The notes beneath the pieces are model-generated. The model saw only the letters and a program-made list of their open reading frames with translations, was not told the DNA's origin and ran no database searches. Positions 3,838 through 63,262 of a DNA stretch of 64,000 nt are shown here, in pieces (the stretch's first letter is position 1; every line of letters starts with the position of its first letter). Both the position numbers and the translations under genes were made by a program. The DNA comes from Octopus sinensis (taxonomy: Eukaryota). The stretch is taken from NCBI RefSeq assembly GCF_006345805.1, contig NC_043001.1:125798001-125862000 (forward strand), in the 5' to 3' direction.

Positions 3838-4290
3838 GTATGTCTGTAGTTTTGTTTTGTTTTTTTTTGGTTTTCCAGTTCTTGTTGTTGTTCTAATCCA
3901 TTATGTCTTTGAGTAAAACGGTTCCAGTTGTTGCCATCCTGTATCTTCACATGTATTTACGGTTACATTGTTAAATGTGTTGTTCTATTTCTTAAAAGGG
4001 TAGGATGTATTCTCGGGTAGATTTTGCTGTCATTTCTCACAGATCAAATGATCAAATAGAGGCTTCTCACCATTGGCTTGGTTGCTTCTGCAGTATTGTG
4101 TTATGGCAGTAGAATGTTAAAGGAAATCAAATAATTAGACACGTTGATGCAGGTATGGCTATGTGGTTATACAATTTACCTCACAATCAAGTGGTTCTGG
4201 ATTCAGTCACACTGAGTGGTACTTTAGACTAACATTATAACCTCTGTAACTTCAATTATAACCTCTAGTCAGCCAAAGCCTTCTGGGTGA

Positions 4291-4645
4291 ACATTATTTA
4301 CATTTGATGGATATTTGTCCTCATCTTGTTTGTTGTTAACACATTTCGGCTGATATACCCTCCAGACTTCATCAGGTGTCTTGGGGGCATATGGCGTAGT
4401 GGTTAAGAGCACGGGCTACTAACCTCAAGATTCCGAGTTCAATTCCAAGCAGTAATCTGAATAATAATAATAACAACATTGAAAAATACCTTAGGATTGA
4501 GAACCCAGGTTCAAAATTTTCCCAAGACACCTGATGAAGGCTGGAGGGTATATCAGCCAAAACGTTGTGTTATCAACAAACAAGATGAGGACAAATATCC
4601 ATCAAATGTAAATAATGTACATAATTCCTCATCCCTCAAATATAG
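4291..4645 (+). mobile_element. tRNA-headed non-autonomous Penelope-like element with hammerhead motif and 5' inverted arm (family H1, copy 1)
   Basis: A-box TGGCGTAGTGG and B-box GAGTTCAATTCC at about 4391-4447. Hammerhead-like 4526-4571. Inverted arm 4291-4385. 3' end CCTCATCCCTCAAATATAG is shared with the other copies. Confidence 0.75.
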
Positions 4646-11955: not shown

Positions 11956-12223
11956 TTTATCTATAGTATATTGAACTGCTATTGGGAGAATCAACAAAAA
12001 AATTATTCCATCCTGCAAAAATTTTTAAATGAATTACTATAAGTTTCATGCTCAGATAGTACAATGATCAAATGAGCTTTTATAGCTTGCCACGTACTAT
12101 CCTGTAATTTTTGAGCCTGAAAGATACAGCATAGTAAATGGCACACTTTACAACCTCATTCAATCATTGCCCTATTTGAATATGAAACTTATAGTAGCTC
12201 ATTTTTTAATCTTTGCTTATTAG

Positions 12224-12269
<46 letters not shown>

Positions 12270-13023
12270 ATATCATCATCATCATCATCATTTAACGTCC
12301 ACCTTCCATGCTAGCATGGGTTGAACGATTTGACTGAGGTCTGGCGAACCAGACTCCAATCTGCTCTGGCCGAGTTTCTACAGCTGGATGCCCTTCCTAA
12401 CGCCAACCACTCCGAGAGTGTAGTGGGTGCTTTTACATGCCACTTGCACGAGGGCCAGTTTGGTGGTACTGGCAACGGCCAAGCCCAAATGGTGATTTTT
12501 ACATGCCACCTGCACAGGAGCTAGTCCAACGGTACTGGCGACAACCTCACTCGAATATTTCACATGCCACCAGCACAAGTGCTAGTAAGGCGACGCAGTA
12601 ACAATCGCGCTTGAATGGTGTGCTTAATGCGCCATTGGCACGAAGGCCAGCTTGTTGCTCTGGCAACGATTTCACTCGTATGGTACGCTTAGCGCTCCAC
12701 TAGCAACGGATGCCAGTCACCGAATTTGATTTCGACTTCGATTTCACTTGCCTCAGCTGGTCTTCACAAGCAGAGTTTAGTGTCTAATGAAGTAAAGGCA
12801 CGCACAAGTGGACTGGTTACACCCCTAGCATAGAGAGAGGCGGGGTGGATATGAGGAGTTTTCTTCAGGATGATTCAAACTAATAGAAATGCATTTTTGA
12901 CCATTTGTTATGTAGCTAAATTTAGATTGAATTAAATGAAATCGAATGTCCTTGTCATGCTTGCCTAATTGTTTGTCTTTCCTCACTACTTTAACTACTT
13001 GAATCTATATATATACATAAAGT

Positions 13024-13407
13024 GGAAGCACTCCGTCGGTTACGACGACGAGGGTTCCGGTTGATCCGAATCAACGGAACAGCCTGCTCGTGAAATTAAC
13101 GTGTAAGTGGCTGAGCACTCCACAGACACGTGTACCCTTAACGTAGTTCTCAGGGATATTCAGCATGACACAGAGAGTGACAAGGCCGGCCCTTTGAAAT
13201 ACAGGTACAACAGAAACAGGAAGTAAGAGTGAGAGAAAGTTGTGGTGAAAGAGTACAGCAGGGATCACCACCATCCCCTGCCGGAGACTCGTGGAGCTTT
13301 AGGTGTTTTCGCTCAATAAACACTCACAACGCCCGGTCTGGGAATCGAAACCGCGATCCTATGACCTCGAGTCCGCTGCCCTAACCACTGGGCCATTGCG
13401 CCTCCAA
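13024..13407 (-). mobile_element. SINE family A, long tail
   Basis: 13-bp TSD ATATACATAAAGT (13011-23 and 13408-20). Near-identical to 88-459. Confidence 0.9.
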
Positions 13408-13622
13408 ATATACATAAAGTAATAATTGATAGAATCACTAGATTATAAAGGCTTATGAGCATGTGTTTTTTAGTAAACATTCTTTTTAATCTCACTGTGA
13501 AAAGTACACACCATGAATAAATAGTGGTTTTTTTTCCCTCTGTGACTAGAAAAAGAAGACCAACCTGATTGTTAGTTTCAGTATTTGTTAACGCTTCATC
13601 AAACTGTTTATTCATTTTCCTG

Positions 13623-14027
13623 TGGAGGCGCAATGGCCCAGTGGTTAGGGCAGCGGACTCGCGGTCATAGGATCACGGTTTCGATTCCCAGACCGGGCGT
13701 TGTGAGTGTTTATTGAGCGAAAACACCTAAAAGTTCCACGAGGCTCCGGCAGGAGATGGTGGTGATCCCTGCTGTACTCTTTCACCACAACTTTCTCTCA
13801 CTCTTACTTTTTCTCTCACTCTTACTTCCTGTTTCTGTTGTACCTGTATTTCAAGGGGCCGGCCTTGTCACTCTCTGTGTCACGCTGAATATCCCTGAGA
13901 ACTACGTTAAGGGTGCACGTGTCTGTGGAGTGCTCAGCCACTTACACGTTAATTTCACGAGCAGGCTGTTCCGTTGATTCGGATCAACCGGAACCCTCAT
14001 CGTCGTAACCGACGGAGTGCTTCCATC
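13623..14027 (+). mobile_element. SINE family A, long tail
   Basis: Same head and tail, TSD-like TATTCATTTTCC flanks, small internal duplication near 13795-13825. Confidence 0.88.
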
Positions 14028-18876: not shown

Positions 18877-19433
18877 TAAATATTTAACTTGGCGAGGTTT
18901 ATTGACATTAAATAAACCAACCACTCTGCAGGGTGGACTCAGTGCTTTTTGAAGTTAGGAAATTCGATAAGCTTAAGATTTCTGTACAACTCCTGCAAAC
19001 ACGAACAGTGTGGAAGACATGGGAATGGAAAAATTAAAGCTAATTAAGATATCCTCAACCTGCTGAGTACCCACCATTGGGTAATTATTACATCAGAGGA
19101 TCTGCTAGCTAGGAAACATATGCAGCCTGCATTTTGCTTGTTCCAATCCCTTAATTTGCATTTATTGTCGCATTCATAGCAACTCTAGTTGCTAACAGTG
19201 AGCTATACAGAAATCTTAAGCTTATCGAATTTCCTAACTTCAAAAAGCACTGAGTCCACCCTGCAGAGTGGTTGGTTTATTTAATGCCAATAAAATGTTT
19301 ATTGTTCCTGAACATACACAGTCCACTTTTTGTTTTCTGTACCTGCTACAGACTGCTTGAGGCTTACAAACTTCCTACACTTGGAACCCTGGGTTGTACC
19401 CTTGCATATCGATATATATATATATACATATAT

Positions 19434-21050: not shown

Positions 21051-21280
21051 TTTAGTCCCTCCTGTTATTGTTCTCCAAGCCATAACAGGAGTAATAACTT
21101 TATTTTTATCATCATTTTATATTCTCAGTTCTATGTTAGCATGAGTTGGATTTATTATAATCCAAGTTACTGTCCTCCTAGATGGATTAAGGACCATTTC
21201 TCACTTGTACTTTCCATTTTTGACATGGTTTCTATTCCTGGATGCACTTCTATCTTTGACCATTTTGCAGAATATACTAG

Positions 21281-21455
21281 GTACATTTTTTACATTCAAC
21301 GGATATTTGTCCTCATCTTGTTTGTTGTTAACACGAAGAAGGCTGGAGGTGGGGGGGTATATTAGCCGAAATGTTGTGTTAACAACAAACAAGATGAGGA
21401 CAAATATCCGTCGAATGTAAATAATATACATAATTCCTCATCTCTTAAAATATAG
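21281..21455 (+). mobile_element. Family H1 copy 2 (5'-truncated inside the hammerhead, with inverted arm)
   Basis: Inverted arm 21281-21334, then a direct arm from GAAGAAGGCTGG to CCTCATCTCTTAAAATATAG. Confidence 0.75.
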
Positions 21456-21734
21456 ATACTAGGTACATGTTGTGAATAGATGGATTGTTTTGTCCCTGAC
21501 AAGACTAAAGCATCCTTTTTAGCTGACATTTTCTCCATTTGCTTACCAACCACTTTTCAGGATGTATAGGTGGAGTTTATTATAGCACTGGCATTCAGAG
21601 GTTCTCATGTCCTCTCTACTTTATGTTTGTCTCTTTTCATTCATTAATTCACCAGTGCATGCTGTTGCATCATCTCTTGTATGACTAATGTGAGTCTTCT
21701 CTTCTCTGCATTGTCTCAGTACAACCAAGGTTAA

Positions 21735-23936: not shown

Positions 23937-24756
23937 ATGAAATTTAATTTTAATTCAATAAATTATAATTTTAATTTTAATAATATTAAAAAGAAATATA
24001 ATAATGGTAATAATAATAATATAATAATAATAATAATAGAAATATAAATAATAAGAATAAAATTTGGTTAATTGTTCCTTATGGGGCTCAAGTTAAAACT
24101 AACATTATTAAAGAGATTTTAAATATTGAACAATTCATTCATGATAATCATAAATATAAAAAAATTTCTCTTGTAATAATTTTGGAGTTGGTCATTCTAC
24201 TACTAATAATGTAGGTAACATTATTTCTTCTTTTAACAAATTTAAGTTGAATAATTTCTATAAAACGAAATTTTATAATCATACCAATAATAATAAAGAT
24301 AAGGCACTCTTAGATTGTACATGTAGAGATAAAACTAAGTGTAAATTTAATGATAAAGGTTATTTAAACGATGTATATAAATGTATAGTTACATTATTTA
24401 ATGAGAATAATTGGAATAATAATAACTTAAATGCCATTTATATAGGGTCCCCTTCCTCTAAAATTAAATTAAGAGTAGCACAGCATATGCATTCCTTTAA
24501 AAATAGGAATTTTATGTATTCTACAAGGTTTAGCAAATACATATGGGGACTAAAATCCCAACAAATTAAGTATAATCTTAAGTGGAAGATAATTTGTAAG
24601 GCGAAATCATATAGTATAGGTAGCAATTATTGTTATTTATGTTCTAGTGAATTTAATGAAATATTATTTATTAATCATAATAAATTAGTGAATACATTGG
24701 ACAAACGTAAAATTAAATGTAGACACAAATTACTTTACTTATATAATAAATTTTAA
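23937..24756 (+). pseudogene. Penelope-like GIY-YIG endonuclease ORF without RT (two frameshifts; 24247-24756 open)
   Basis: IWLIVPYGAQVKTNII...KKIFSCNN..IISSFNK linker, CTC..KC, VYK...YIG...R...H, SKYIW.LK, CYLC..E and CRHK are all typical of the PLE C-terminal GIY-YIG region. Frameshifts near 24020 (AAT repeat) and 24165. Confidence 0.85.
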
Positions 24757-27505: not shown

Positions 27506-27835
27506 TGCAGCGTGGAAGGTGTTTATAAGCCATTTAAGAAACACACAAAAGCCGTTCGATTCACTTCAACATTTAAGTTTAATTTGTCAAAATATTTTCG
27601 TCGCTTTAAGACTGCGACCTGTTCACTGACAAAGCAGCACGGATTTTTGTCAGTGAACAGGTAGCGGTCTTAAAGCGACGAAAATATTTTGACAAATTAA
27701 ACTTAAATGTTGAAGTGAATCGAACGGCTTTTGTGTTTCTTAAATGGCTTACAAACACCTTCCACGCTGCAATTGTTTACGTTCCAGCTCACGATCTCAG
27801 ATCAAATCACTTGCTATGCAAGTACATCTCCGTAA
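27506..27835. repeat. Fold-back element (about 125-bp arms around GCAGCACGGATTT plus a ~63-bp unique tail); second copy 50184-50436
   Basis: Left arm from 27506 is the reverse complement of about 27646-27772. Confidence 0.85.
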
Positions 27836-28251: not shown

Positions 28252-29200
28252 TCAGGTTGAATAAAATGTAAGCAATGTTTTGAACCATGAAGAATTTGTA
28301 CCAGACTTTTGCAGGGTTTTGAATTTTTTTATACATTTTTTTTGCAATTGTCTGATAATGCAGACATATACTTGTCCAAATGCACCACTAAATTAACATT
28401 GATATTTTTTTCACCGTTGTTCCATTAGAAATGGAACTGTCAAAGCACAATATTCAAGTAATTTTGCTGTTCAACTTCAAAAAAGGATGTAAAGCAGCTG
28501 AAACCGCTCACGATATCAGCAAGATGTTTGGTGAGGAAATGACCCAGTGATTGGTCAGCTGGAAAATAGTTTAAACGATTTCACAGTGGAAATCTTAACC
28601 CTGAAGATCGTGAGCATAGTGGATGCCCATGTGTCATTGATGGCAGTCAATTAAAAACCATCATTGAGAAAGATCCACGTAAAACCATTTGAGAACTGGC
28701 AAAAGAACTTCAAGTTAGCCAGAAAACTGTCTGCAACCATTTGCATGCGATCAAAAAAGCTCGACAAATGGGTATCACACGATTTGAATGAAAATCAGAA
28801 AATGTGCAGACATGAAATTTGCTCATCTCTTCTTCTCCGTAACCTAACCAATCCATTTCTCAACCATATTGTAACTTGTGGTGAAAAGTGGATTCTGTAC
28901 AATAATAAAAAAAGTTCTTCGCAGTGGTTGGACCAAAATGAAGCACTGAAAACCTTCCCTAAACCTGAGCTCTTCAAAAAGGTTATGGTGACTGTTTGGT
29001 GGTGTACTACTGGACTCATCCACTACAACTTCTTAAAACCCGAAAAATCATTACTGCAGAAACATATTGCCATGAAATTTCCAAAATTAATGAAAAACTG
29101 CAACTCCTCTGTCCTAGACTGGTCAACAGAAGAGGGCCAATCATTCTTCATGACAATGCTCAACCACACGTTTCACTAATGATGCACCAAAAGTTGAGAG
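28252..29200 (+). mobile_element. Decayed, 3'-truncated mariner (DD34D-type) transposon
   Basis: TA followed by a TCAGGTTG TIR start. Frameshifted ORFs contain WVSHDL (WVPHEL-like), IVTCGEKWILY and HDNAQPH. Confidence 0.85.
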
Positions 29201-32744: not shown

Positions 32745-33382
32745 TGACAATCTAAAATTCTTGACCAAGTTTTGGCCTTCCAACTACAGGGTTGGCAGTA
32801 TGTATCCTTTGATTGACACTGCATGCCTGGTGTCTTCTGTTGGCATACTTAACTATTAACAACTCTTGCAGACCTACATACAAACTTGTAGCAAAGTAAG
32901 GGGGGAAATACAGCTCACTGCAAGAAACAGTATACACGTGGAAGGGAGAGGCAGTGTAGCTGACAATTTGTTTTGTTAAATTCCATTGCAATGCTGAGCT
33001 TCAAACCTTTTGCAAGTTTATTATAATGCAGTGGCAAACCTCCATGGTATAATGGCAAAATGCAAACAGCAAGCTTCGCTCTCACTCTCTCGTATAATCC
33101 TTTTTCTAATAGGCACAAGGTGGAGAGGGCTAGTCAAATACATCAAGCCCAATGCTCAACTGGTGCTTGTTTTATCAACCCCGAGAGGATGAAAAGCAAA
33201 GTCAACCGTGGCAGTATTTGAACTCAGAATGTAAAAGCCGGAAGAAATGCCATGAAGCCTTTGTCTGATGTTCTTATGATTCTGCCAGCTTCTCACCACT
33301 CTTTCGTATAATATAATGGTTAATTTGTCTAGTAATTGTTTCCCCTAAGATGGATAATTTCTCCTTTGATTTTTGCTATTTT

Positions 33383-33788
33383 ATACATCATTTACATTGG
33401 ACGGATATGTGCCCTCATCTTGTTTGTTGTTACCACAACATTTCAGCTGAGTTACTCTCCAGCCTTCATCAGGTGTCCTGGTGGAATTTTGAACCCGACC
33501 CTGGGTTCTCATTCCTAAAGTACATTTTGCTGATGTTACTACTACTATTATTATTTATTCAAGGCACTGAGTTCAATTCCAGACAGTGCCTTGAATAAAT
33601 AATAATAATAATAATATCAGCAAAAATACTTTAGGAATGAGAACCCAGGGTTGGGTTCAAAATTCCACCAGAACACCGGATGAAGGCTGGAGGGTAAATC
33701 AGCCGAAACGTGGTAACAATAAACAAGATGAGAACATATATCTGTCCAATGTAAATAATATACAGAATTCCTCATCTCTTAAATATAG
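33383..33788 (+). mobile_element. Family H1 copy 3 (about 400-bp fold-back centred on the B-box remnant)
   Basis: Arms about 33383-33569 and 33584-33770 flank the loop AGTTCAATTCCAGA. Hammerhead motifs at 33466-33472 (-) and 33677-33683 (+). Same 3' terminus as the other copies. Confidence 0.78.
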
Positions 33789-34654
33789 AAGAGTATTTGC
33801 TATTATATTTTCATCTTTTAGTGATGAGGAATGCAGTGGCCAGGACTGTTTACAGGGCCTCTGAGATTGATGGGAGGAAGAGAAGGCATCCTAAAATGGG
33901 AAACTTGGTCCGACTGCTTGCAATGGAGAGGACTCTGCTAAAGACACCCAAAGTCCCAAGTGTAGTTGGTAAACTGGGTGATGGATTAAGACTTACCACC
34001 CAGGAAGGCCATCGTAGGATTTTAACTCAGAACGTAAACGGCAAGGAGAAATACCACATGGAATCTAGTTTGACGTTCTTACAGTACCACCAATCCACTA
34101 TTCTGGATTAGTATTTTTTATTTTTTTTAAATCCTGAAAGGATGAAATGTTTGTGGTTCTTGGTGGGATTTGAACTGAGTGCAGAGGATTGGAACTTGAA
34201 AAAAAAAAAAAAAGAAAAAAAGACTAGAATTTGACTCAATTTGTTTGTCACATATGTATGACAAAATATTGGATGGCTTTGGTTATGGAAAGAAAAAAAT
34301 GCGGGGGTGGGGGTATCTATACTTTCAGAAGTAATTAGAAAATTCGATATATTTATTCTTGGAGTGGGGGGGTGGGAGCTTTGGACCAGGAATCAAACTC
34401 ACACTAAAGACTTGATTTGCGAGGCACTTACCTCTTGCTAATCAGCGTTGAGGTAAATAATGTAATGAAAACAAAACCACGAGATTATGCAGTCATTCAG
34501 CCTGCTAGACATAGCAGCTAAATCTCCGTCAGATCATACCCTATCGTCTTAGGACACATGTCCAGGACTTCATTGTCCAGTAACAAAAATATGGGTTGTT
34601 CAAGGCTGGAACATCTTTGATTATAAGTCTGCTCAATCAGGGCTTACCTGGAGC

Positions 34655-36931: not shown

Positions 36932-37560
36932 ATGTCACTGTCTTTCACTCAGCACGTCGTTAACAAAGCACTCGGAGTTCTGTTTTTGATTCGACGGTCA
37001 TTCGGAATGCTCACAGCAGCCATATTCCTACAGCTCTATGTCACGCTGGTGAGACCCATATTGGAGTACGGGATTCAAGCCTCTTCTCCTTATCTCTTCA
37101 AAGACATATATTATCTTGAAAGAGTCCAGAAGCTGGCTACCCGCATGGTTCTTGGTCTCAAGCATTTGTCTTATGAAGAAAGGCTGAAGACGCTCAACCT
37201 TTATTCTCTAGAAAAACGCCGCCGCCGTGGTGATCTCATTCTTGCTCACAACATCATAAGCGGAAAGTGTAACCTCTCGAAAGAGCTGTTCTTCACTCCT
37301 GCTCCAGAGCGTAGGCTGCGGGATCACTCCGAAAAGCTCTATCTGCGATGATTTCATCTCAATCGAAGGAGAGGGGCTTTCTCCGTCCGGGTTGCGGATC
37401 CGTGGAATAAGCTGCCGACGACCGCTCGGTTCAAAGTCTCTCTTGACCAGAAATGGCCTGAACTCTTTGCATGAACACCCTCCCCGTACATAACTCCATG
37501 TCCCCCTACATGGCCTTGCTTTTTGCTTTTTGAGCCAAAATTAACTTAACTTAACTAACT
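36932..37560 (+). mobile_element. CR1-type LINE 3' fragment
   Basis: LYVTLVRPILEYG...LERVQKLATRM...YEERL..L.L.SLEKRR.RGDL...WNKLP, with an (AACTT)n tail. Confidence 0.88.
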
Positions 37561-42790: not shown

Positions 42791-43522
42791 TGTATGTATA
42801 TGAACGTAGGCTCTCAATGCTATCCCTTCATAATGCTGTGATTCCAAACGACTGCCTTTACAGCATTACACACATGCAGACATGCATGCACACATACACA
42901 CGCACATGCACTCACACAAACAGTTTATCAGCAATATTTCTGTGCATAGAATATTCCCGGGAATCTGGAAAGAGAAGAAAAAAGGAAGCTTCATAAGTGA
43001 ATATTCAATATGAATATACATATGTGTGTGCATACATACATAGATAAATGTGTGTGTGGGAGTGTAGATACATACATACATACATACATGTATGTGTGTA
43101 CATACATAGATAAATGAGTATATATGTATGTGCATACATATTATATAGCCCCACACATACAAATATGAATATACGATTTGACTGAGGTCTGGCGAACCAG
43201 CTGGCTGCACCAGATCAGATTGGAGTCTGGTGCAGCCATCTGGTTCGCCAGACCTCAGTCAAATTGTCCAACCCATGCTCGCATGGAAAGCGGACGTTAA
43301 ACAATGATGATGATGATATATATATATATAGTTGAATGAATTATCTTATTATGGATAATTCGGTTAACCGATACCTGGGTAGCAAATTCACGTCAGAAAA
43401 ACACGGTTGAAGCTACATGCCAAGGGCAGAGATCACGTGCTTTCGTGTGGAAATTTGTGTGTTTTTATAATACAAATAAATGAAAGAATGGAGTTGAACG
43501 ACGATTTAACAAAATTCCTTTA

Positions 43523-43605
43523 TTCTCGACATATGTTTCGAAGGCTGCATATTCCTAATTTCGAAGGAATAAGGGGTGCATTATGCAGCCTTCTCATCAG
43601 GAAAA
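43523..43605 (-). ncRNA. Type I hammerhead ribozyme, apparently intact
   Basis: Minus strand TTTTC-CTGATGA-GAAGGCTGCAT...ATGCAGCCTTC-GAAA-CATATG-TC/GAGAA. Canonical core, 11-bp stem II, palindromic stem III ACATATGT, GUC site and 5-bp stem I. Confidence 0.85.
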
Positions 43606-44686
43606 ACAAGGAACTTATGTCAGCATCAAGATGAAAAAAACTTTTAGATGACTGCCCACATGGAGCCCATAGCGATAGGAATATGCAGCCTTCGAAACAT
43701 ATGTCGAGAATAAAGGAATTTTGTTAAATCGTCGTTCAACTCCATTCTTTCATTCATTTGTATATATATATATATTTACGTTTATCAATTTATGTTGTAA
43801 GATTCCTGATGTGAAATCGTGTGTTGAAACAGATATTGTTGTATTTCAGGATGGTCATTTTTTTTTTTACTTTTTCTTTTTTGCAAATAAATATATGCTC
43901 TATATATTTGTTCCTCACTCATTTATTACTGTTCTTATTCTAACTCATGTCCATTGTCCAAAAAATCTTTTGTCACACATCTGCGGCCTCTTATTGTTCT
44001 CATTTTAACTCATGTCCATTGTCCAAAAAATCTTTTGTCACACATCTGCGGCCTCTTCCGCGACCCTTTCTGTTTCCATGTGTACTCTTACTCCACTTAT
44101 TTCATTCTGTTCTTCTATGATGTGTATCCTTATATGTGCATGCATTTGTGTGTGTGTGTTTATATGGGTTGAGTCATTGCTCTTCATAGCACTATGACCT
44201 TCCCCTCAGCTCCATTCCCTCTGCCGTTGTCACTGCTGCTGTCCTAGGACCCGAAATTTGGTACAGTTCCTGTTTTTCTCTGTGTTTGCCCATGCTGCTG
44301 CCATCATGGTATAGTTGTTGTTGTTGCCATCGTATTTACTGCTGTTGTTGTTGTTAGTTGTATTGCTGATACTGTTGCAGCTGTCTGTGAGGTTACTGTA
44401 TGTTTGTTTGTGAGTGTATATGGGTTCGCTTCCTATGTTGTTTGTATCTGTGCCCTTTATACTCTTTTACTCTTTACTCTTTTACTTGTTTCAGTCATTT
44501 GACTGCGGCCATGCTGGAGCACCGCCTTTAGTCGAGCAAATTGACCCCAGGACTTATTCTTTGTAAGCCCAGTACTTATTCTATCGGTCTCTTTTGCCGA
44601 ACTGCTAAGTGACGGGGACGTAAACACACCAGCATCAGTTGTCAAGCAATGCGAGGGGGACAAACACAGACACACAAACATATACT

Positions 44687-45451: not shown

Positions 45452-45586
45452 TTAAATAAGTACCAGTTACGCACTGGGGTCAATATAATCGACTTAATCC
45501 GTTTGTCTGTCCTTGTTTGTCCTCTCTGTGTTTAGCCCCTTGTGGGTAGTAAAGAAATAGCTATTAATTTATGCTGTTAATCAAGT

Positions 45587-46110
45587 CTTTCTCTTCTTTG
45601 AGCCATCACCAATGTTCCCCTATATGCTCCCCTATGTTGCATGCAGTCTCTCCAATGTAATTGGTTTGTCATGTTTCTGCACCATCCCTCAGTACATTGT
45701 AAGCTATACACTATATTCCTAACCTTACTGTTAACCCATGTATTGTATGTAGGATGAACCCACGGGTTAACTGTAAGGTTAGGAATATAGTGTATAGCTT
45801 ACAATGTACTAAGGGATGGTGCAGAAACATGACAATTACTTACATTGGAGAGACTGCATGTAGCATAGGGGAGCATATAGGTGACCATTGGTGAGAGCTC
45901 AAAGAAGAGAAAGGCCTGTCAGTGCTCTACCAACATGTTCAAGCAGAACATAGAGGTTAAGGTATTATCGGTGCATAGAACTGACAAGACACTTACACAG
46001 ATCACAGAGGCAACACACAGAGCAATAGACAGACCGTGGAGAACAAATATATAATGCGTGTGTATATTTGGCAAAAAAAAAAATTGACCATCCCGAAATA
46101 CAAAAATATA
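45587..46110 (+). mobile_element. 5'-truncated Penelope-like GIY-YIG fragment with ~154-bp inverted 5' arm
   Basis: 45763 onward reads RVNCKVRNIVYSLQCTKGWCRNMTITYIGETACSIGEHIGDHW*. Arms 45587-45740 and 45761-45913. Confidence 0.78.
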
Positions 46111-48631: not shown

Positions 48632-49226
48632 AATATAAAATCTTAGTCAGTCAGTGGAAGGACTTCACTACCTCATATGTTCTTAAAAATTTAAATCCAC
48701 ATCTTTGTATATATATCTACCTTCTCTATAATGTTGCCACTTGATTTGAAAATTTTTGTATTAATGGAAAACCTCTATAATTGGCTGATGAGTACTCAGC
48801 ATCTTAAATCTGTTGTAATACTTACAACATTTAATAAAATGATGTAGTACGAAACAATCGTACCAAATTACCGGAGTCATTCTTGTTGCTTATTTTGAGT
48901 ATATATATATACAAAGGGCTTCTTTCAGTTTCCATCTACCAAATCAACTTACAAGGCTTTGATTGGCCCAAGACTATAGTAGAAGACACATACCCAAGGT
49001 ACCACACAGTGGGACTGAACCCGCAACCATGTAGTTGGGAAGCAAGCTTCTTGCCACACAGCCACACCTGCACTTGTTTGTGCTACACTCAGCTACAAGC
49101 TACAAGCAGTGACACAGATGTCATTTTCCTTGTCATCAAATCAATCACTGGCTTTGAACCTCTAAAAAGCTATGAAATATTAAAAAAAAAACCCTTACAT
49201 TTAATAAATAGAAGTATTTTGTTTAA

Positions 49227-61260: not shown

Positions 61261-61559
61261 CTGAAATGATAAATTGTAATGGATAAGTTAGAAAGACAAA
61301 AAGAGAAAAATAAAACAAAGCTGCAAATAAAATTGTAGTACAAACTGAAGTACCTTACAACACAGTTTAAACTATTGTTCTCAATCTGAGAATCTGTGGT
61401 GGTGGAGGAGAACAAGGGGTCAATTTTTTTATGCCCAATTGTTACCCCGTGCTGGCATGGATGAGATGAAACTTTATTAAGATGGATTTTTTTATGGCTG
61501 TGTGCTTTTCCTGTTGCCAACCCTAAGCAAGTTATAAACAGTAGCTACAACACATCGTG

Positions 61560-61906
61560 ATGTATATTTGCCATTTAAATATGGCTAACTCCTAAGGGTG
61601 GATGCTACTGTAGTTTGCAGCCTCAGGAGGACACCTCCTCCACAGCTAGGAATATTTGCCATTTAAATATGGCTAACCCCTAAGGGTGGATGCTACTGTA
61701 GTTTGTAGCCCCAGGAGGACACCTCCTCCACAGCTAGGAATATTTGCCATTTAAATATGGCTAACCCCCAAGGGTGGATGCTACTGTAGTTTGTAGCCCC
61801 AGGAGGACACCTCCTCCACGGCTGGAGGAGGTGTCCTCCTGGGGCTACAAACTACAGTAGCATCCACCCTTAGGGGTTAGCCATATTTAAATGGCAAATA
61901 TACGTC
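61560..61906. repeat. Three 88-bp tandem units followed by one inverted unit
   Basis: TATTTGCC recurs at 61565, 61653 and 61741. The inverted unit spans about 61823-61906. Confidence 0.92.
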
Positions 61907-63262
61907 ACAACCCTAACAAGGTTTTTGAAGTAAGGTACTTTTTTCAATCCCACTAGTTGTGACATGACCGCTGAATGATAGAGTATTTTTCTCACTTGCA
62001 AAAGTAAATGTTACTGCCTTTCACTTAGAAGGTGTTAATGGCAGCATGCTGAATTGACATATACACATACATGTATGAAGGTGTGTGGCCTGGTCATTAG
62101 GGCATTGCATTCATGATTGTAAGATTGTGGTTTTAATTCCCATGCCGGATGTTGTGTTGTGTTCTTGAGCAAAAGACACTCCATTTCCTGTTGCCCCAGT
62201 CCATTCAGCTGAAAATAGCTAGCAAATTAACCCTGCAATCAATGGACTGGCATTGCGTTCAGGGAGAAGTATTGCAATCTCAATCACTTACACACCATGG
62301 GAACCAGGTTAAGCTTTGACCTTATGGGTCCCAAGGCTGATGGCAAACCTAAGAACTCCCATAGGCGCAGGAGTGGCTGTGTGGTAAGTAGCTTGTTTAC
62401 CAACCACATGGTTCCGGGTTCAGTCCCACTGCATGGCACCTTGGGCAAATGTCTTCTACTATAGCCTCGGGCCGACCAAAGCCTTGTGAGTGGATTTGGT
62501 AGACGGAAACTGAAAGAAGCCCGTCGTATATATGTATATATATATGTGTGTGTGTGTGTGTTTGTGTGTCTGTGTTTGTCCCTCTAGCATTGCTTGACAA
62601 CCGATGCTGGTGTGTTTATGTCCCCGTTACTTAGCGGTTCGGCAAAAGAGACTGATAGAATAAGTACTGGGCTTACAAAAGAATAAGTCCCGGGGTCGAG
62701 TTGCTCAATTAAAGGCGGTGCTCCAGCATGGCCACAGTCAAATGACTGAAACAAGTAAGAGAGTAAAGAGTAAAGAGTATATAAGGTACATTCCCTTGCA
62801 GTTTCCACCTACCAATTCCACTCACAAGGCATGTGTTGACCAAGGGTTATAGTATCCAGAACCCATAAACATTTCATTCACTAACAATCATAGTGTATAA
62901 AACCATTTAAGGGGGAGTATAGTTAGATATTTTAGATTTTAGATTTTATCTAGTTTCAGCTCACGAGCTGTGGCCATGTGGTAAAAATTATATTAAGTAC
63001 TGTCACTTTGTCAAAATAATTGTAAATTTGAATGAATTCACTTATACTACATTATGTCCACACTTACCGTGTGCCTCTAACCAGTTTGTAACCCCTAGCT
63101 TGACCAAAATTTTGATCTACTGGAAGCTGTCAGTCACTTGCCATATCCTGAATGTCTTGCTTCTCTGGACATTGATGACATGCTAAAGCATTAACGACTA
63201 CCAAGCTAACTTAGTAGAAGCTCACAAGATTACCCTCCAAAAGAATACCCTCCATCAGGCAT

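What the first reader, a model, noticed from the sequence alone, without database searches (positions are those of the whole stretch)
43470..43762. Apparently intact GUC hammerhead with its own cis-antisense arm, downstream of the tetraspanin on the same strand
Seen: a canonical type I hammerhead at 43605-43523 with predicted cleavage between 43528 and 43527. An 87-bp arm at 43676-43762 is the reverse complement of 43470-43557 with about one mismatch, so the event is young. In a minus-strand RNA this arm is transcribed first and can pair with the GAAA, stem III and cleavage-site half, which would silence the ribozyme and create an ADAR substrate. The motif lies about 6.2 kb past the Tspan stop codon. 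Inference: it could cut an extended Tspan 3' UTR or read-through RNA, gated by alternative folding or editing. Hammerheads in mammalian Clec2 3' UTRs are a precedent.
Basis: partly seen in the sequence, partly recalled or inferred. Interest (0 to 1): 0.8.

Follow-up and report, generated by a model that had tools for sequence, protein, structure and literature searches.

The report
Hammerhead ribozyme in a retroelement hairpin
The hammerhead ribozyme motif and its inverted arm are really there, but they look like the ordinary footprint of a young insertion of a ribozyme-carrying Penelope-type retroelement, not a switch that controls the neighbouring tetraspanin gene.

Summary
The arms 43470-43557 and 43676-43763 are 88 nt long with one mismatch. 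The minus strand carries every conserved hammerhead core position, with the cut predicted at 43528|43527. My descriptor finds this motif only, against 0.005 expected per shuffled window.

It is not canonical. No Rfam hammerhead model matches it, even at E<=10. Helix II is a 54-nt domain. Helix III is the palindrome ACAUAUGU, the style reported for animal retroelement hammerheads that cleave as dimers.

The window holds at least 10 compact inverted repeats. A second hammerhead repeat family has three insertions. Each is an inverted 5'-truncated copy plus a direct copy with a ~24-nt tail, and two are bracketed by 13-16-bp target-site duplications. This is the published Penelope-like-element insertion signature.

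Most likely, 43466-43768 is a 210-nt copy joined to a 93-nt inverted partial copy made at insertion. The arm would bury the ribozyme's 3' half (-169 against -51 kcal/mol).

Nothing ties it to the tetraspanin gene. Its stop codon lies 6.29 kb upstream, with 10 poly(A) hexamers between. No relatives could be retrieved, so family membership rests on architecture. Verdict: new member of a known kind, modest interest.

The parts
43466..43675 (-). Long copy of the repeat unit (210 nt, read 43675->43466). It contains the complete hammerhead, and its 3' end abuts TA-rich sequence.
   Evidence: Boundaries come from the inverted-repeat limits. It is unique in the window.
43676..43768 (+). Inverted, 5'-truncated copy (93 nt) of the last 92 nt of the unit. 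It is joined head-to-head to the long copy. It carries only the 3' half of the hammerhead (helix II 3' strand, GAAA, helix III, GUC, helix I 3' strand).
   Evidence: 88 nt at 99% and 93 nt at 97.8%. There is no CUGAUGA upstream on the + strand (read).
43601..43613 (-). Helix I, 5' strand (UUCCUUGUUUUUC).
   Evidence: Pairs with 43527-43515 as 5 bp, a 2x2 internal loop and 6 bp. Seen in the MFE fold.
43594..43600 (-). Core box CUGAUGA (C3-A9).
   Evidence: Direct reading and descriptor scan.
43540..43593 (-). Helix II domain, 54 nt. It consists of a 12-bp stem (43593-43582 / 43551-43540, beginning with G10.1-C11.1) and a 30-nt insert with an inner hairpin.
   Evidence: Fold of the isolated motif.
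43536..43539 (-). Core box GAAA (G12, A13, A14, A15.1).
   Evidence: Direct reading.
43529..43536 (-). Helix III, the 8-nt palindrome ACAUAUGU. In a monomer it can form only A-U and C-G closing an AUAU tetraloop. In a dimer it forms an 8-bp intermolecular helix.
   Evidence: RNAcofold gives a dimer at -78.8 kcal/mol against 2 x -35.7, with the palindromes paired between the two strands.
43527..43528 (-). Predicted cleavage site: GUC(43528) | G(43527).
   Evidence: Position follows from the core geometry. Cleavage itself is not tested.
43515..43527 (-). Helix I, 3' strand (GAGAAUAAAGGAA).
43764..43776 (.). (TA)n run at the outer end of the short copy. The left outer flank (43460-43469) is TTTTTATA. 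This is a TA-rich target with no discernible target-site duplication.
   Evidence: The target-site-duplication search was not significant.

Best explanation
The 303-bp block 43466-43768 is a young insertion of a hammerhead-carrying retroelement of the Penelope-like-element (PLE) / animal-retrozyme kind. It is either a non-autonomous element or a heavily 5'-truncated copy.

It has two parts. The first is a 210-nt copy on the minus strand whose type I hammerhead lies 62 nt from the unit's 3' end. The second is a 93-nt copy of the same 3' end in the opposite orientation, joined head-to-head.

The inverted arm was made at insertion. PLE endonuclease-reverse transcriptase cleaves and extends both DNA strands, and PLE insertions often carry an adjacent inverted 5'-truncated copy.

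The ribozyme belongs to the element's own RNA processing. It is built to act as a dimer through its palindromic helix III.

At this locus, any RNA covering both arms folds into a ~93-bp hairpin that buries the ribozyme's 3' half. The copy is therefore probably catalytically silent unless transcription starts inside 43675-43614.

Shown: the motif, the arms, the folding energetics and the parallel architecture of another hammerhead family in the window. Inferred: PLE-type origin, formation of the arm at insertion, and silence in vivo.
For: 1. The core is complete and well above chance.
2. Helix III is an 8-nt palindrome and helix II is long. These are the traits reported for PLE and metazoan type I hammerheads that work as dimers (PMC4209133; PMC6765202). 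The dimer fold is predicted.
3. Published PLE signature: strong 5' truncation, an adjacent inverted 5'-truncated copy forming inverted repeats, a 30-40-bp tail at one end, (TA)n targets and a hammerhead near the 3' end (PMC8557442). A purified PLE protein cleaves and extends both strands (PMC11167929). Dual hammerheads 100-700 bp apart on opposite strands have been reported.
4. Three insertions of a second hammerhead family in the same window (4288-4645, 33384-33795, 21290-21455) each consist of an inverted truncated copy plus a direct copy. They share outer ends, have different inner junctions and carry a ~24-nt tail on one side only. The composites are bracketed by target-site duplications of 15/16 and 12/13 nt. 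The inverted repeat therefore arises at insertion.
5. At least 10 compact inverted repeats occur in 64 kb.
6. The element sits in TA-rich sequence.
Against: - No second copy of this particular unit could be found. There is none in the window, none in viral contigs or prokaryotic genome contigs, only two chance matches in metagenomes, and no ORF relatives. The source species is apparently absent from the protein collection: the best tetraspanin exon hit is 84% identical. The multi-copy nature of the unit is therefore untested.
- No RT or GIY-YIG domain was detected within 38.5-49.5 kb.
- No target-site duplication or tail can be recognised for this copy.
- This motif lacks the unpaired nucleotide between A9 and 10.1 that is typical of PLE min-hammerheads.
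- Its 3' end shows no significant similarity to the other two hammerhead units.
Confidence: 0.6

Rival explanations
1. The hammerhead cuts an extended tetraspanin 3' UTR or read-through RNA, and the upstream antisense arm gates it through alternative folding or A-to-I editing.
For: - The motif is on the same strand as the tetraspanin.
- The core is intact.
- The arm can sequester the 3' half.
- A 3' UTR hammerhead is known in Clec2 genes.
Against: - The motif is 6.29 kb past the stop codon, with 10 poly(A) hexamers and several repeats in between.
- The hairpin is favoured by about 118 kcal/mol, so the default state is 'off'.
- The loop-less helix III needs a second molecule.
- The inverted-repeat layout is generic for repeats in this window.
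- There are no conservation or expression data.
Confidence: 0.04
2. A solo hammerhead-bearing repeat was inserted first. The 93-nt arm arose later by a local inverted duplication, for example replication template switching or fold-back repair, unrelated to retrotransposition.
For: - The arms are nearly identical.
- No target-site duplication brackets the composite.
- No other copy is available to show that the outer arm ends coincide with the unit's 3' end.
Against: - The same layout recurs in three independent insertions of another hammerhead family. Two of them have target-site duplications enclosing both copies.
- That layout is the documented PLE pattern.
- Both arms end at the same nucleotide next to TA-rich sequence.
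Confidence: 0.2
3. A MITE or foldback DNA transposon with ~90-bp terminal inverted repeats that happens to carry, or captured, a hammerhead.
For: - The size (303 bp), long terminal inverted repeats and TA-rich flanks are MITE-like.
- A mariner transposase fragment is present in the window.
Against: - No clean TA or other target-site duplication was found.
- There is no second copy in 64 kb.
- The hammerhead straddles the arm/spacer boundary, as expected for unequal truncation of two copies.
- The other hammerhead family has variable inner junctions and 13-16-bp target-site duplications, which do not fit cut-and-paste elements.
Confidence: 0.08
4. The hammerhead-like motif is a chance occurrence inside an unrelated hairpin repeat.
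For: - No Rfam hammerhead model matches.
- Helix II is atypically long.
- There are no homologues to show conservation.
Against: - 0.005 hits are expected per shuffled window under the stricter descriptor, with none having a helix II of 8 bp or more.
- All core positions are present, together with G10.1-C11.1, a GUC triplet and a palindromic helix III.
- The genome clearly holds other hammerhead families.
Confidence: 0.03

Closest known systems
Hammerheads of Penelope-like elements (min-HHRs and variants; Cervera & de la Pena 2014, PMC4209133)
   Same: - Type I topology.
- Palindromic helix III that allows only dimeric formation of a stable helix III.
- Longer-than-usual helix II.
- G10.1-C11.1 pair.
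- Mostly solo copies attributed to truncated elements, some as pairs on opposite strands 100-700 bp apart.
- Location near the 3' end of the unit.
   Different: - Helix II here is 12 bp plus a 30-nt insert, against 7-8 bp.
- There is no unpaired nucleotide between A9 and 10.1.
- Helix I is longer (5 + 6 bp).
- No RT/EN ORF lies nearby.
Animal non-LTR retrozymes with type I hammerheads (PMC7229834; proposed to be PLE derivatives in bioRxiv 10.64898/2026.07.22.740005)
   Same: - Low-GC repeat unit of a few hundred nt.
- Type I hammerhead with a short helix III capped by a palindromic tetraloop (C-G closing AUAU).
- No coding capacity.
   Different: - Retrozymes are defined by tandem head-to-tail repeats that yield circular RNAs. 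This is one copy plus an inverted fragment.
- No canonical loop 1 - loop 2 contacts are recognisable.
Complex PLE insertions (pLTR plus adjacent inverted 5'-truncated copy plus tail; Craig et al. 2021, PMC8557442; PAc biochemistry, PMC11167929)
   Same: - Inverted 5'-truncated copy abutting the 5' end of a 5'-truncated copy.
- TA-rich target.
- No discernible target-site duplication.
   Different: - A tail cannot be identified for this copy.
- No ORF is present.
- Family copy number is unknown.
Schistosoma SM-alpha / Sj-alpha SINE-like hammerhead elements (as summarised in PMC6765202)
   Same: Short non-coding retroposon carrying a type I hammerhead. The second family in this window (4288-4645 and its relatives) has a tRNA-like head plus a hammerhead, much like these.
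   Different: The unit at 43466-43675 shows no tRNA-like head, and ARAGORN finds no tRNA genes in the window.
Discontinuous hammerhead in rodent Clec2 3' UTRs (Martick et al. 2008, as summarised in PMC6765202)
   Same: Hammerhead on the sense strand downstream of a protein-coding gene's stop codon.
   Different: - The Clec2 ribozyme is split by a several-hundred-nt insert and lies between the stop codon and the poly(A) signal.
- This one is continuous, lies 6.29 kb downstream and is embedded in a repeat.

Membership tests
Hammerhead ribozyme, type I | Conserved core: C3 U4 G5 A6 N7 G8 A9, G12 A13 A14, A15.1-U16.1, H17 | tested here: met
   CUGAUGA at 43600-43594, GAAA at 43539-43536, U at 43529, C at 43528. 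It is the only descriptor hit in the window, against 0.005 expected.
Hammerhead ribozyme, type I | Three helices around the core, helix I open, G10.1-C11.1 closing helix II | tested here: met
   Helices I and II appear in the MFE fold. The canonical fold is within 2.3 kcal/mol of the MFE. Helix III is only 2 bp plus a tetraloop in cis, or 8 bp in trans.
Hammerhead ribozyme, type I | Match to curated covariance models (Rfam Hammerhead families) | tested here: not met
   No hammerhead hit at gathering score or at E<=10 on 651 nt. The likely reasons are the 54-nt helix II domain and the loop-less helix III.
Hammerhead ribozyme, type I | Site-specific self-cleavage | not testable with these tools
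   Needs in vitro transcription and cleavage of monomer and dimer constructs.
PLE-associated dimeric hammerheads | Palindromic helix III / loop 3 | tested here: met
   ACAUAUGU at 43536-43529. The intermolecular helix is predicted. The criterion comes from PMC4209133.
PLE-associated dimeric hammerheads | Unpaired nucleotide between A9 and 10.1 | tested here: not met
   CUGAUGA is followed directly by G10.1. The second family in the window does have this nucleotide (CUGAUGA-A-GGCUG).
PLE-associated dimeric hammerheads | Located in the pLTR of an element encoding RT and GIY-YIG EN | tested here: not met
   No Pfam domain was found in stop-to-stop frames of at least 45 aa across 38.5-49.5 kb. This is compatible with a solo, truncated or non-autonomous copy, which is the commonest state reported.
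PLE-type complex insertion | Adjacent inverted 5'-truncated copy forming an inverted repeat | tested here: met
   93-nt inverted copy abutting the 5' end of the 210-nt copy. The criterion comes from PMC8557442.
PLE-type complex insertion | 30-40-bp tail at one end; microsatellite (TA)n target | tested here: inconclusive
   TA-rich flanks are present. A tail cannot be defined without other copies, and no significant target-site duplication was found.
PLE-type complex insertion | Member of a dispersed multi-copy family | not testable with these tools
   No copy in the window. No eukaryotic genome of the source species is searchable here.
Non-LTR retrozyme | Head-to-tail tandem repeats, each with a hammerhead | tested here: not met
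   Only one hammerhead of this kind is present, with no direct repeat of the unit.
Clec2-type 3' UTR regulatory hammerhead | Cleavage site between the stop codon and the poly(A) signal of the host mRNA | tested here: inconclusive
   The cut site is 6.29 kb from the stop codon, with 10 AAUAAA/AUUAAA hexamers in between. No transcript data are available.
MITE | Terminal inverted repeats with a fixed-length target-site duplication and many uniform copies | tested here: inconclusive
   Terminal inverted repeats are present. No target-site duplication was found and there is no second copy.

The most novel reading that the evidence does not exclude
This hammerhead may represent a previously undescribed variant class with a ~55-nt structured helix II domain. 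It and the motif at 48785-48862 both have such a domain, and both are missed by all Rfam models. Such a class would be carried by PLE-dependent short retroposons. The insertion-generated antisense arm would make this copy a conditional ribozyme: off in read-through RNA and on in internally initiated RNA, possibly relieved by editing or unwinding of the hairpin. A further possible sign of in-vivo cleavage comes from the other family. In the 21.3-kb insertion, the inverted copy starts exactly at the predicted cut site.
Probability: 0.08. Interest if true: 0.6.

Novelty: new member of a known kind. Interest (0 to 1): 0.3.

Why it matters
Hammerheads embedded in Penelope-like elements, retrozymes and SINE-like repeats are already known in the thousands in invertebrate genomes. 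One more copy does not change the picture.

Three points have modest value:
- These variants escape the curated Rfam models, so annotation pipelines would miss them.
- The window offers a compact illustration that PLE-type insertion itself creates long perfect hairpins, which are potential ADAR or Dicer substrates. This matters when such hairpins near genes are read as regulatory devices.
- In the other family, one junction coincides with the predicted cut site. If this recurs genome-wide, it would be rare genomic evidence that these low-activity ribozymes cleave in vivo.

Tried and rejected
- Rfam at gathering score on the whole window, and at E<=10 on three sub-regions. No hammerhead family matched. 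Only sub-threshold microRNA-precursor and snoRNA-like matches appeared, as expected for hairpins.
- Search for relatives of the unit. Exact-pattern scans of viral contigs found nothing. Prokaryotic genome contigs gave nothing. Metagenome contigs gave two hits, both chance matches inside a bacterial coding region with no CUGAUGA upstream.
- Protein search with the 75-aa ORF that overlaps the element found nothing.
- Species identification through a tetraspanin exon failed. The best hit was 84% identical and unnamed, so I do not name the organism.
- Search for a PLE ORF next to the element found no Pfam hit in 38.5-49.5 kb. A 'NIVYSLQC...YIGET'-like peptide at 45.7 kb proved to be the two strands of another inverted repeat, so I dropped it.
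- ORF 24247-24756 has a GIY...YIG-like pattern by eye. It has no Pfam or PDB support and only one unannotated homologue. I did not use it as evidence.
- Sequence similarity between this unit and the other two hammerhead units, over the whole unit or the 3' ends, was not significant.
- The target-site-duplication search for this element was not significant.
- An alternative hammerhead using the first GAAA (43562-43559) was rejected by direct reading. No helix III or UH follows it.

Full report
**What is there**

Two arms, 43470-43557 and 43676-43763, are 88 nt long and 99% complementary, with a 118-nt spacer. blastn extends them to 43466-43557 and 43676-43768, 93 nt at 97.8%.

On the minus strand the sequence reads as follows:
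- UUCCUUGUUUUUC (43613-43601)
- CUGAUGA (43600-43594)
- GAAGGCUGCAUA (43593-43582)
- a 30-nt insert
- UAUGCAGCCUUC (43551-43540)
- GAAA (43539-43536)
- CAUAUG (43535-43530)
- U (43529), C (43528), then the predicted cut
- GAGAAUAAAGGAA (43527-43515)

Every conserved hammerhead core position is present. So are the G10.1-C11.1 pair, the A15.1-U16.1 pair and a GUC triplet.

A descriptor scan of both strands of the window returns this site only. The expectation is 0.005 hits per dinucleotide-shuffled window, and no shuffled hit had a helix II of 8 bp or more. The isolated RNA folds into helices I and II (-34.4 kcal/mol, z = -4.75). The canonical hammerhead secondary structure lies within 2.3 kcal/mol of the MFE.

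**How canonical is it?**

- No Rfam hammerhead model matches, at gathering score on the whole window or at E<=10 on a 651-nt slice.
- Helix II is a 54-nt domain: a 12-bp stem plus a 30-nt insert with its own hairpin.
- Helix III is the 8-nt palindrome ACAUAUGU. Within one molecule it can form only A-U and C-G closing an AUAU tetraloop. Between two molecules it forms an 8-bp helix. RNAcofold predicts that domain-swapped double hammerhead at -78.8 kcal/mol, against 2 x -35.7 for two monomers.
- A short or absent helix III with palindromic sequence, type I topology and a longer helix II are the traits described for hammerheads of Penelope-like elements (PLEs) and other metazoan repeats. Those ribozymes cleave as dimers, and poorly in vitro (PMC4209133; PMC6765202; PMC7229834).

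**Context in the window**

The window is an AT-rich animal genome segment (about 37% GC) full of repeats.
- A TspanC8-like tetraspanin lies on the minus strand. Pfam Tetraspanin gives E = 1.5e-14 on exons 61287-61105 and 53080-52889. The last exon ends with TGA at 49817-49815.
- A mariner transposase fragment and SINE-like repeats are also present.
- Compact, near-perfect inverted repeats are frequent, with at least ten in 64 kb. Examples are 13023-14025, 18898-19294, 27543-27736, 33418-33731, 45582-45918, 61557-61908, 4288-4621 and 43173-43267.

The hammerhead's arm is therefore one instance of a common local architecture.

**A second hammerhead family shows how such arms arise**

Three composite insertions share a unit: 4288-4645, 33384-33795 and 21290-21455. 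The consensus reads CUGAUGA-A-GGCUG(10 nt)CAGCC-GAAA-YG-UU|GUGUUAAC. This is a PLE-style minimal hammerhead, and it includes the unpaired nucleotide after A9. Individual copies are decayed, for example AAAA in place of GAAA, or CGGAUGA in place of CUGAUGA.

Each insertion consists of an inverted 5'-truncated copy followed by a direct copy.
- The outer ends are the same in all three, while the inner junctions differ.
- The direct copy alone carries a ~24-nt extension, AATTCCTCATCTCTTAAATATAG.
- Two composites are bracketed by direct repeats. These are 21274-21289 / 21456-21471 (15 of 16 nt; 0 of 500 shuffles reach the score) and 33372-33384 / 33796-33808 (12 of 13 nt; 11 of 500).

Inverted copy and direct copy therefore went in as one event.

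[quoted passage not shown] A purified PLE protein cleaves and extends both DNA strands (PMC11167929). That gives a simple mechanism for two opposed cDNAs.

A third hammerhead motif lies on the + strand at 48785-48862. It has a GUA cut and a 59-nt helix II domain, and sits in a ~265-nt unit flanked by (TA)n on both sides. The relaxed descriptor that finds it expects 0.01 hits per shuffled window.

**Best explanation for the finding**

By analogy, 43466-43768 is a single young retro-insertion.
- One part is a 210-nt copy (43675->43466, minus strand), with the hammerhead cut site 62 nt from its 3' end.
- The other part is a 93-nt inverted 5'-truncated copy (43676->43768, plus strand).
- Both outer ends abut TA-rich sequence.
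- The near-identity of the arms shows that the event is recent. The arms of the other family are only 86-93% identical.

The ribozyme's natural job would be processing of its element's own RNA, as a dimer. The arm is a by-product of insertion. I put this at about 0.6.

The main weakness is that I could not retrieve any other copy of this unit.
- There is none in the window.
- Viral contigs and prokaryotic genome contigs hold none.
- Metagenomes gave only two chance hits.
- The overlapping ORF has no relatives.
- The source species seems absent from the protein collection.

There is also no RT or GIY-YIG ORF within about 5 kb. No target-site duplication or tail is recognisable for this copy. 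Its 3' end is not significantly similar to those of the other two units.

The physical part holds. An RNA spanning the whole block folds into one long hairpin at -169 to -170 kcal/mol. With the upstream arm kept unpaired, the rest folds at -50.9 kcal/mol and forms hammerhead helices I and II. Read-through RNA would therefore bury the GAAA, helix III and cut-site half. The duplex would be a plausible ADAR or Dicer substrate (my own knowledge), as would any of the other inverted repeats here.

The regulatory part is unsupported.
- The cut site is 6.29 kb past the tetraspanin stop codon, with 10 AAUAAA/AUUAAA hexamers and several repeats in between.
- No second same-strand hammerhead is nearby to provide a dimer partner.
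- The Clec2 precedent is a discontinuous ribozyme lying between the stop codon and the poly(A) signal.

**Rivals**

- A later local inverted duplication of a solo repeat (0.2) cannot be excluded without other copies or alleles.
- A MITE or foldback element (0.08) fits the size and terminal repeats. It does not fit the lack of a target-site duplication, or the way the hammerhead straddles the arm boundary.
- Chance (0.03) is unlikely given the shuffles and the other hammerhead families.
- The gated tetraspanin-UTR ribozyme (0.04) has no positive evidence.

**Verdict**

This is a real, apparently intact type I hammerhead of the retroelement kind, sitting in a PLE-style inverted insertion. It is a new member of a known kind, and interest is modest (0.3). 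The decisive step is a search of the source genome for copies of the unit, followed by cleavage assays on monomer, dimer and full-hairpin RNAs.

Noticed in passing
window 4288-4645, 33384-33795, 21290-21455: A second hammerhead-bearing repeat family. It has a tRNA-like head (A/B-box-like sequence at 4386-4450) and a PLE-style minimal hammerhead, CUGAUGA-A-GGCUG..CAGCC-GAAA-YG-UU|GUGUUAAC. Each insertion is an inverted 5'-truncated copy plus a direct copy carrying a ~24-nt tail. Target-site duplications of 15/16 nt and 12/13 nt bracket two of them. The hammerhead in each copy is degenerate.
   Followed up: partly
window 21334 / 21375-21376: In the 21.3-kb insertion, the inverted copy's 5' end (21334) is exactly the first nucleotide after the predicted hammerhead cut. 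In the direct copy that cut falls at 21375|21376. This may be a fossil of an RNA template that had self-cleaved in vivo. It is a single case, and chance is roughly a few percent.
   Followed up: partly
window 48785-48862 (+), unit about 48634-48900: A third complete hammerhead core, antisense to the tetraspanin. It has a GUA cut after 48862, a helix II domain of 59 nt, and a helix III of 2 bp plus an AAUC loop. The unit sits inside a (TA)n microsatellite. Rfam does not detect it. The relaxed descriptor expects 0.01 hits per shuffled window.
   Followed up: partly
window 13023-14025, 18898-19294, 27543-27736, 45582-45918, 61557-61908, 12015-12216, 43173-43267: Many other compact, near-perfect inverted repeats built from SINE-like units that also occur as single copies elsewhere in the window. 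This suggests that head-to-head double insertion is a general feature of retroposition in this genome.
   Followed up: no
window 24247-24756 (+), within a ~20% GC stretch at 24-26 kb: A 169-aa ORF with a Cys-rich N-terminus and, by eye, a VY...YIG...R..H pattern reminiscent of GIY-YIG nucleases. It has no Pfam or PDB support and only one unannotated homologue (E = 1.8e-9).
   Followed up: partly
window 28664-29179 (+); 36932-37351 (+): A mariner-type transposase fragment (Pfam Transposase_1, E = 2.7e-14), and an ORF that by eye resembles the C-terminal part of a LINE reverse transcriptase (no Pfam hit).
   Followed up: partly
window 43926-44055: A 65-bp unit duplicated in tandem at 95% identity, just downstream (on the + strand) of the element.
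   Followed up: no
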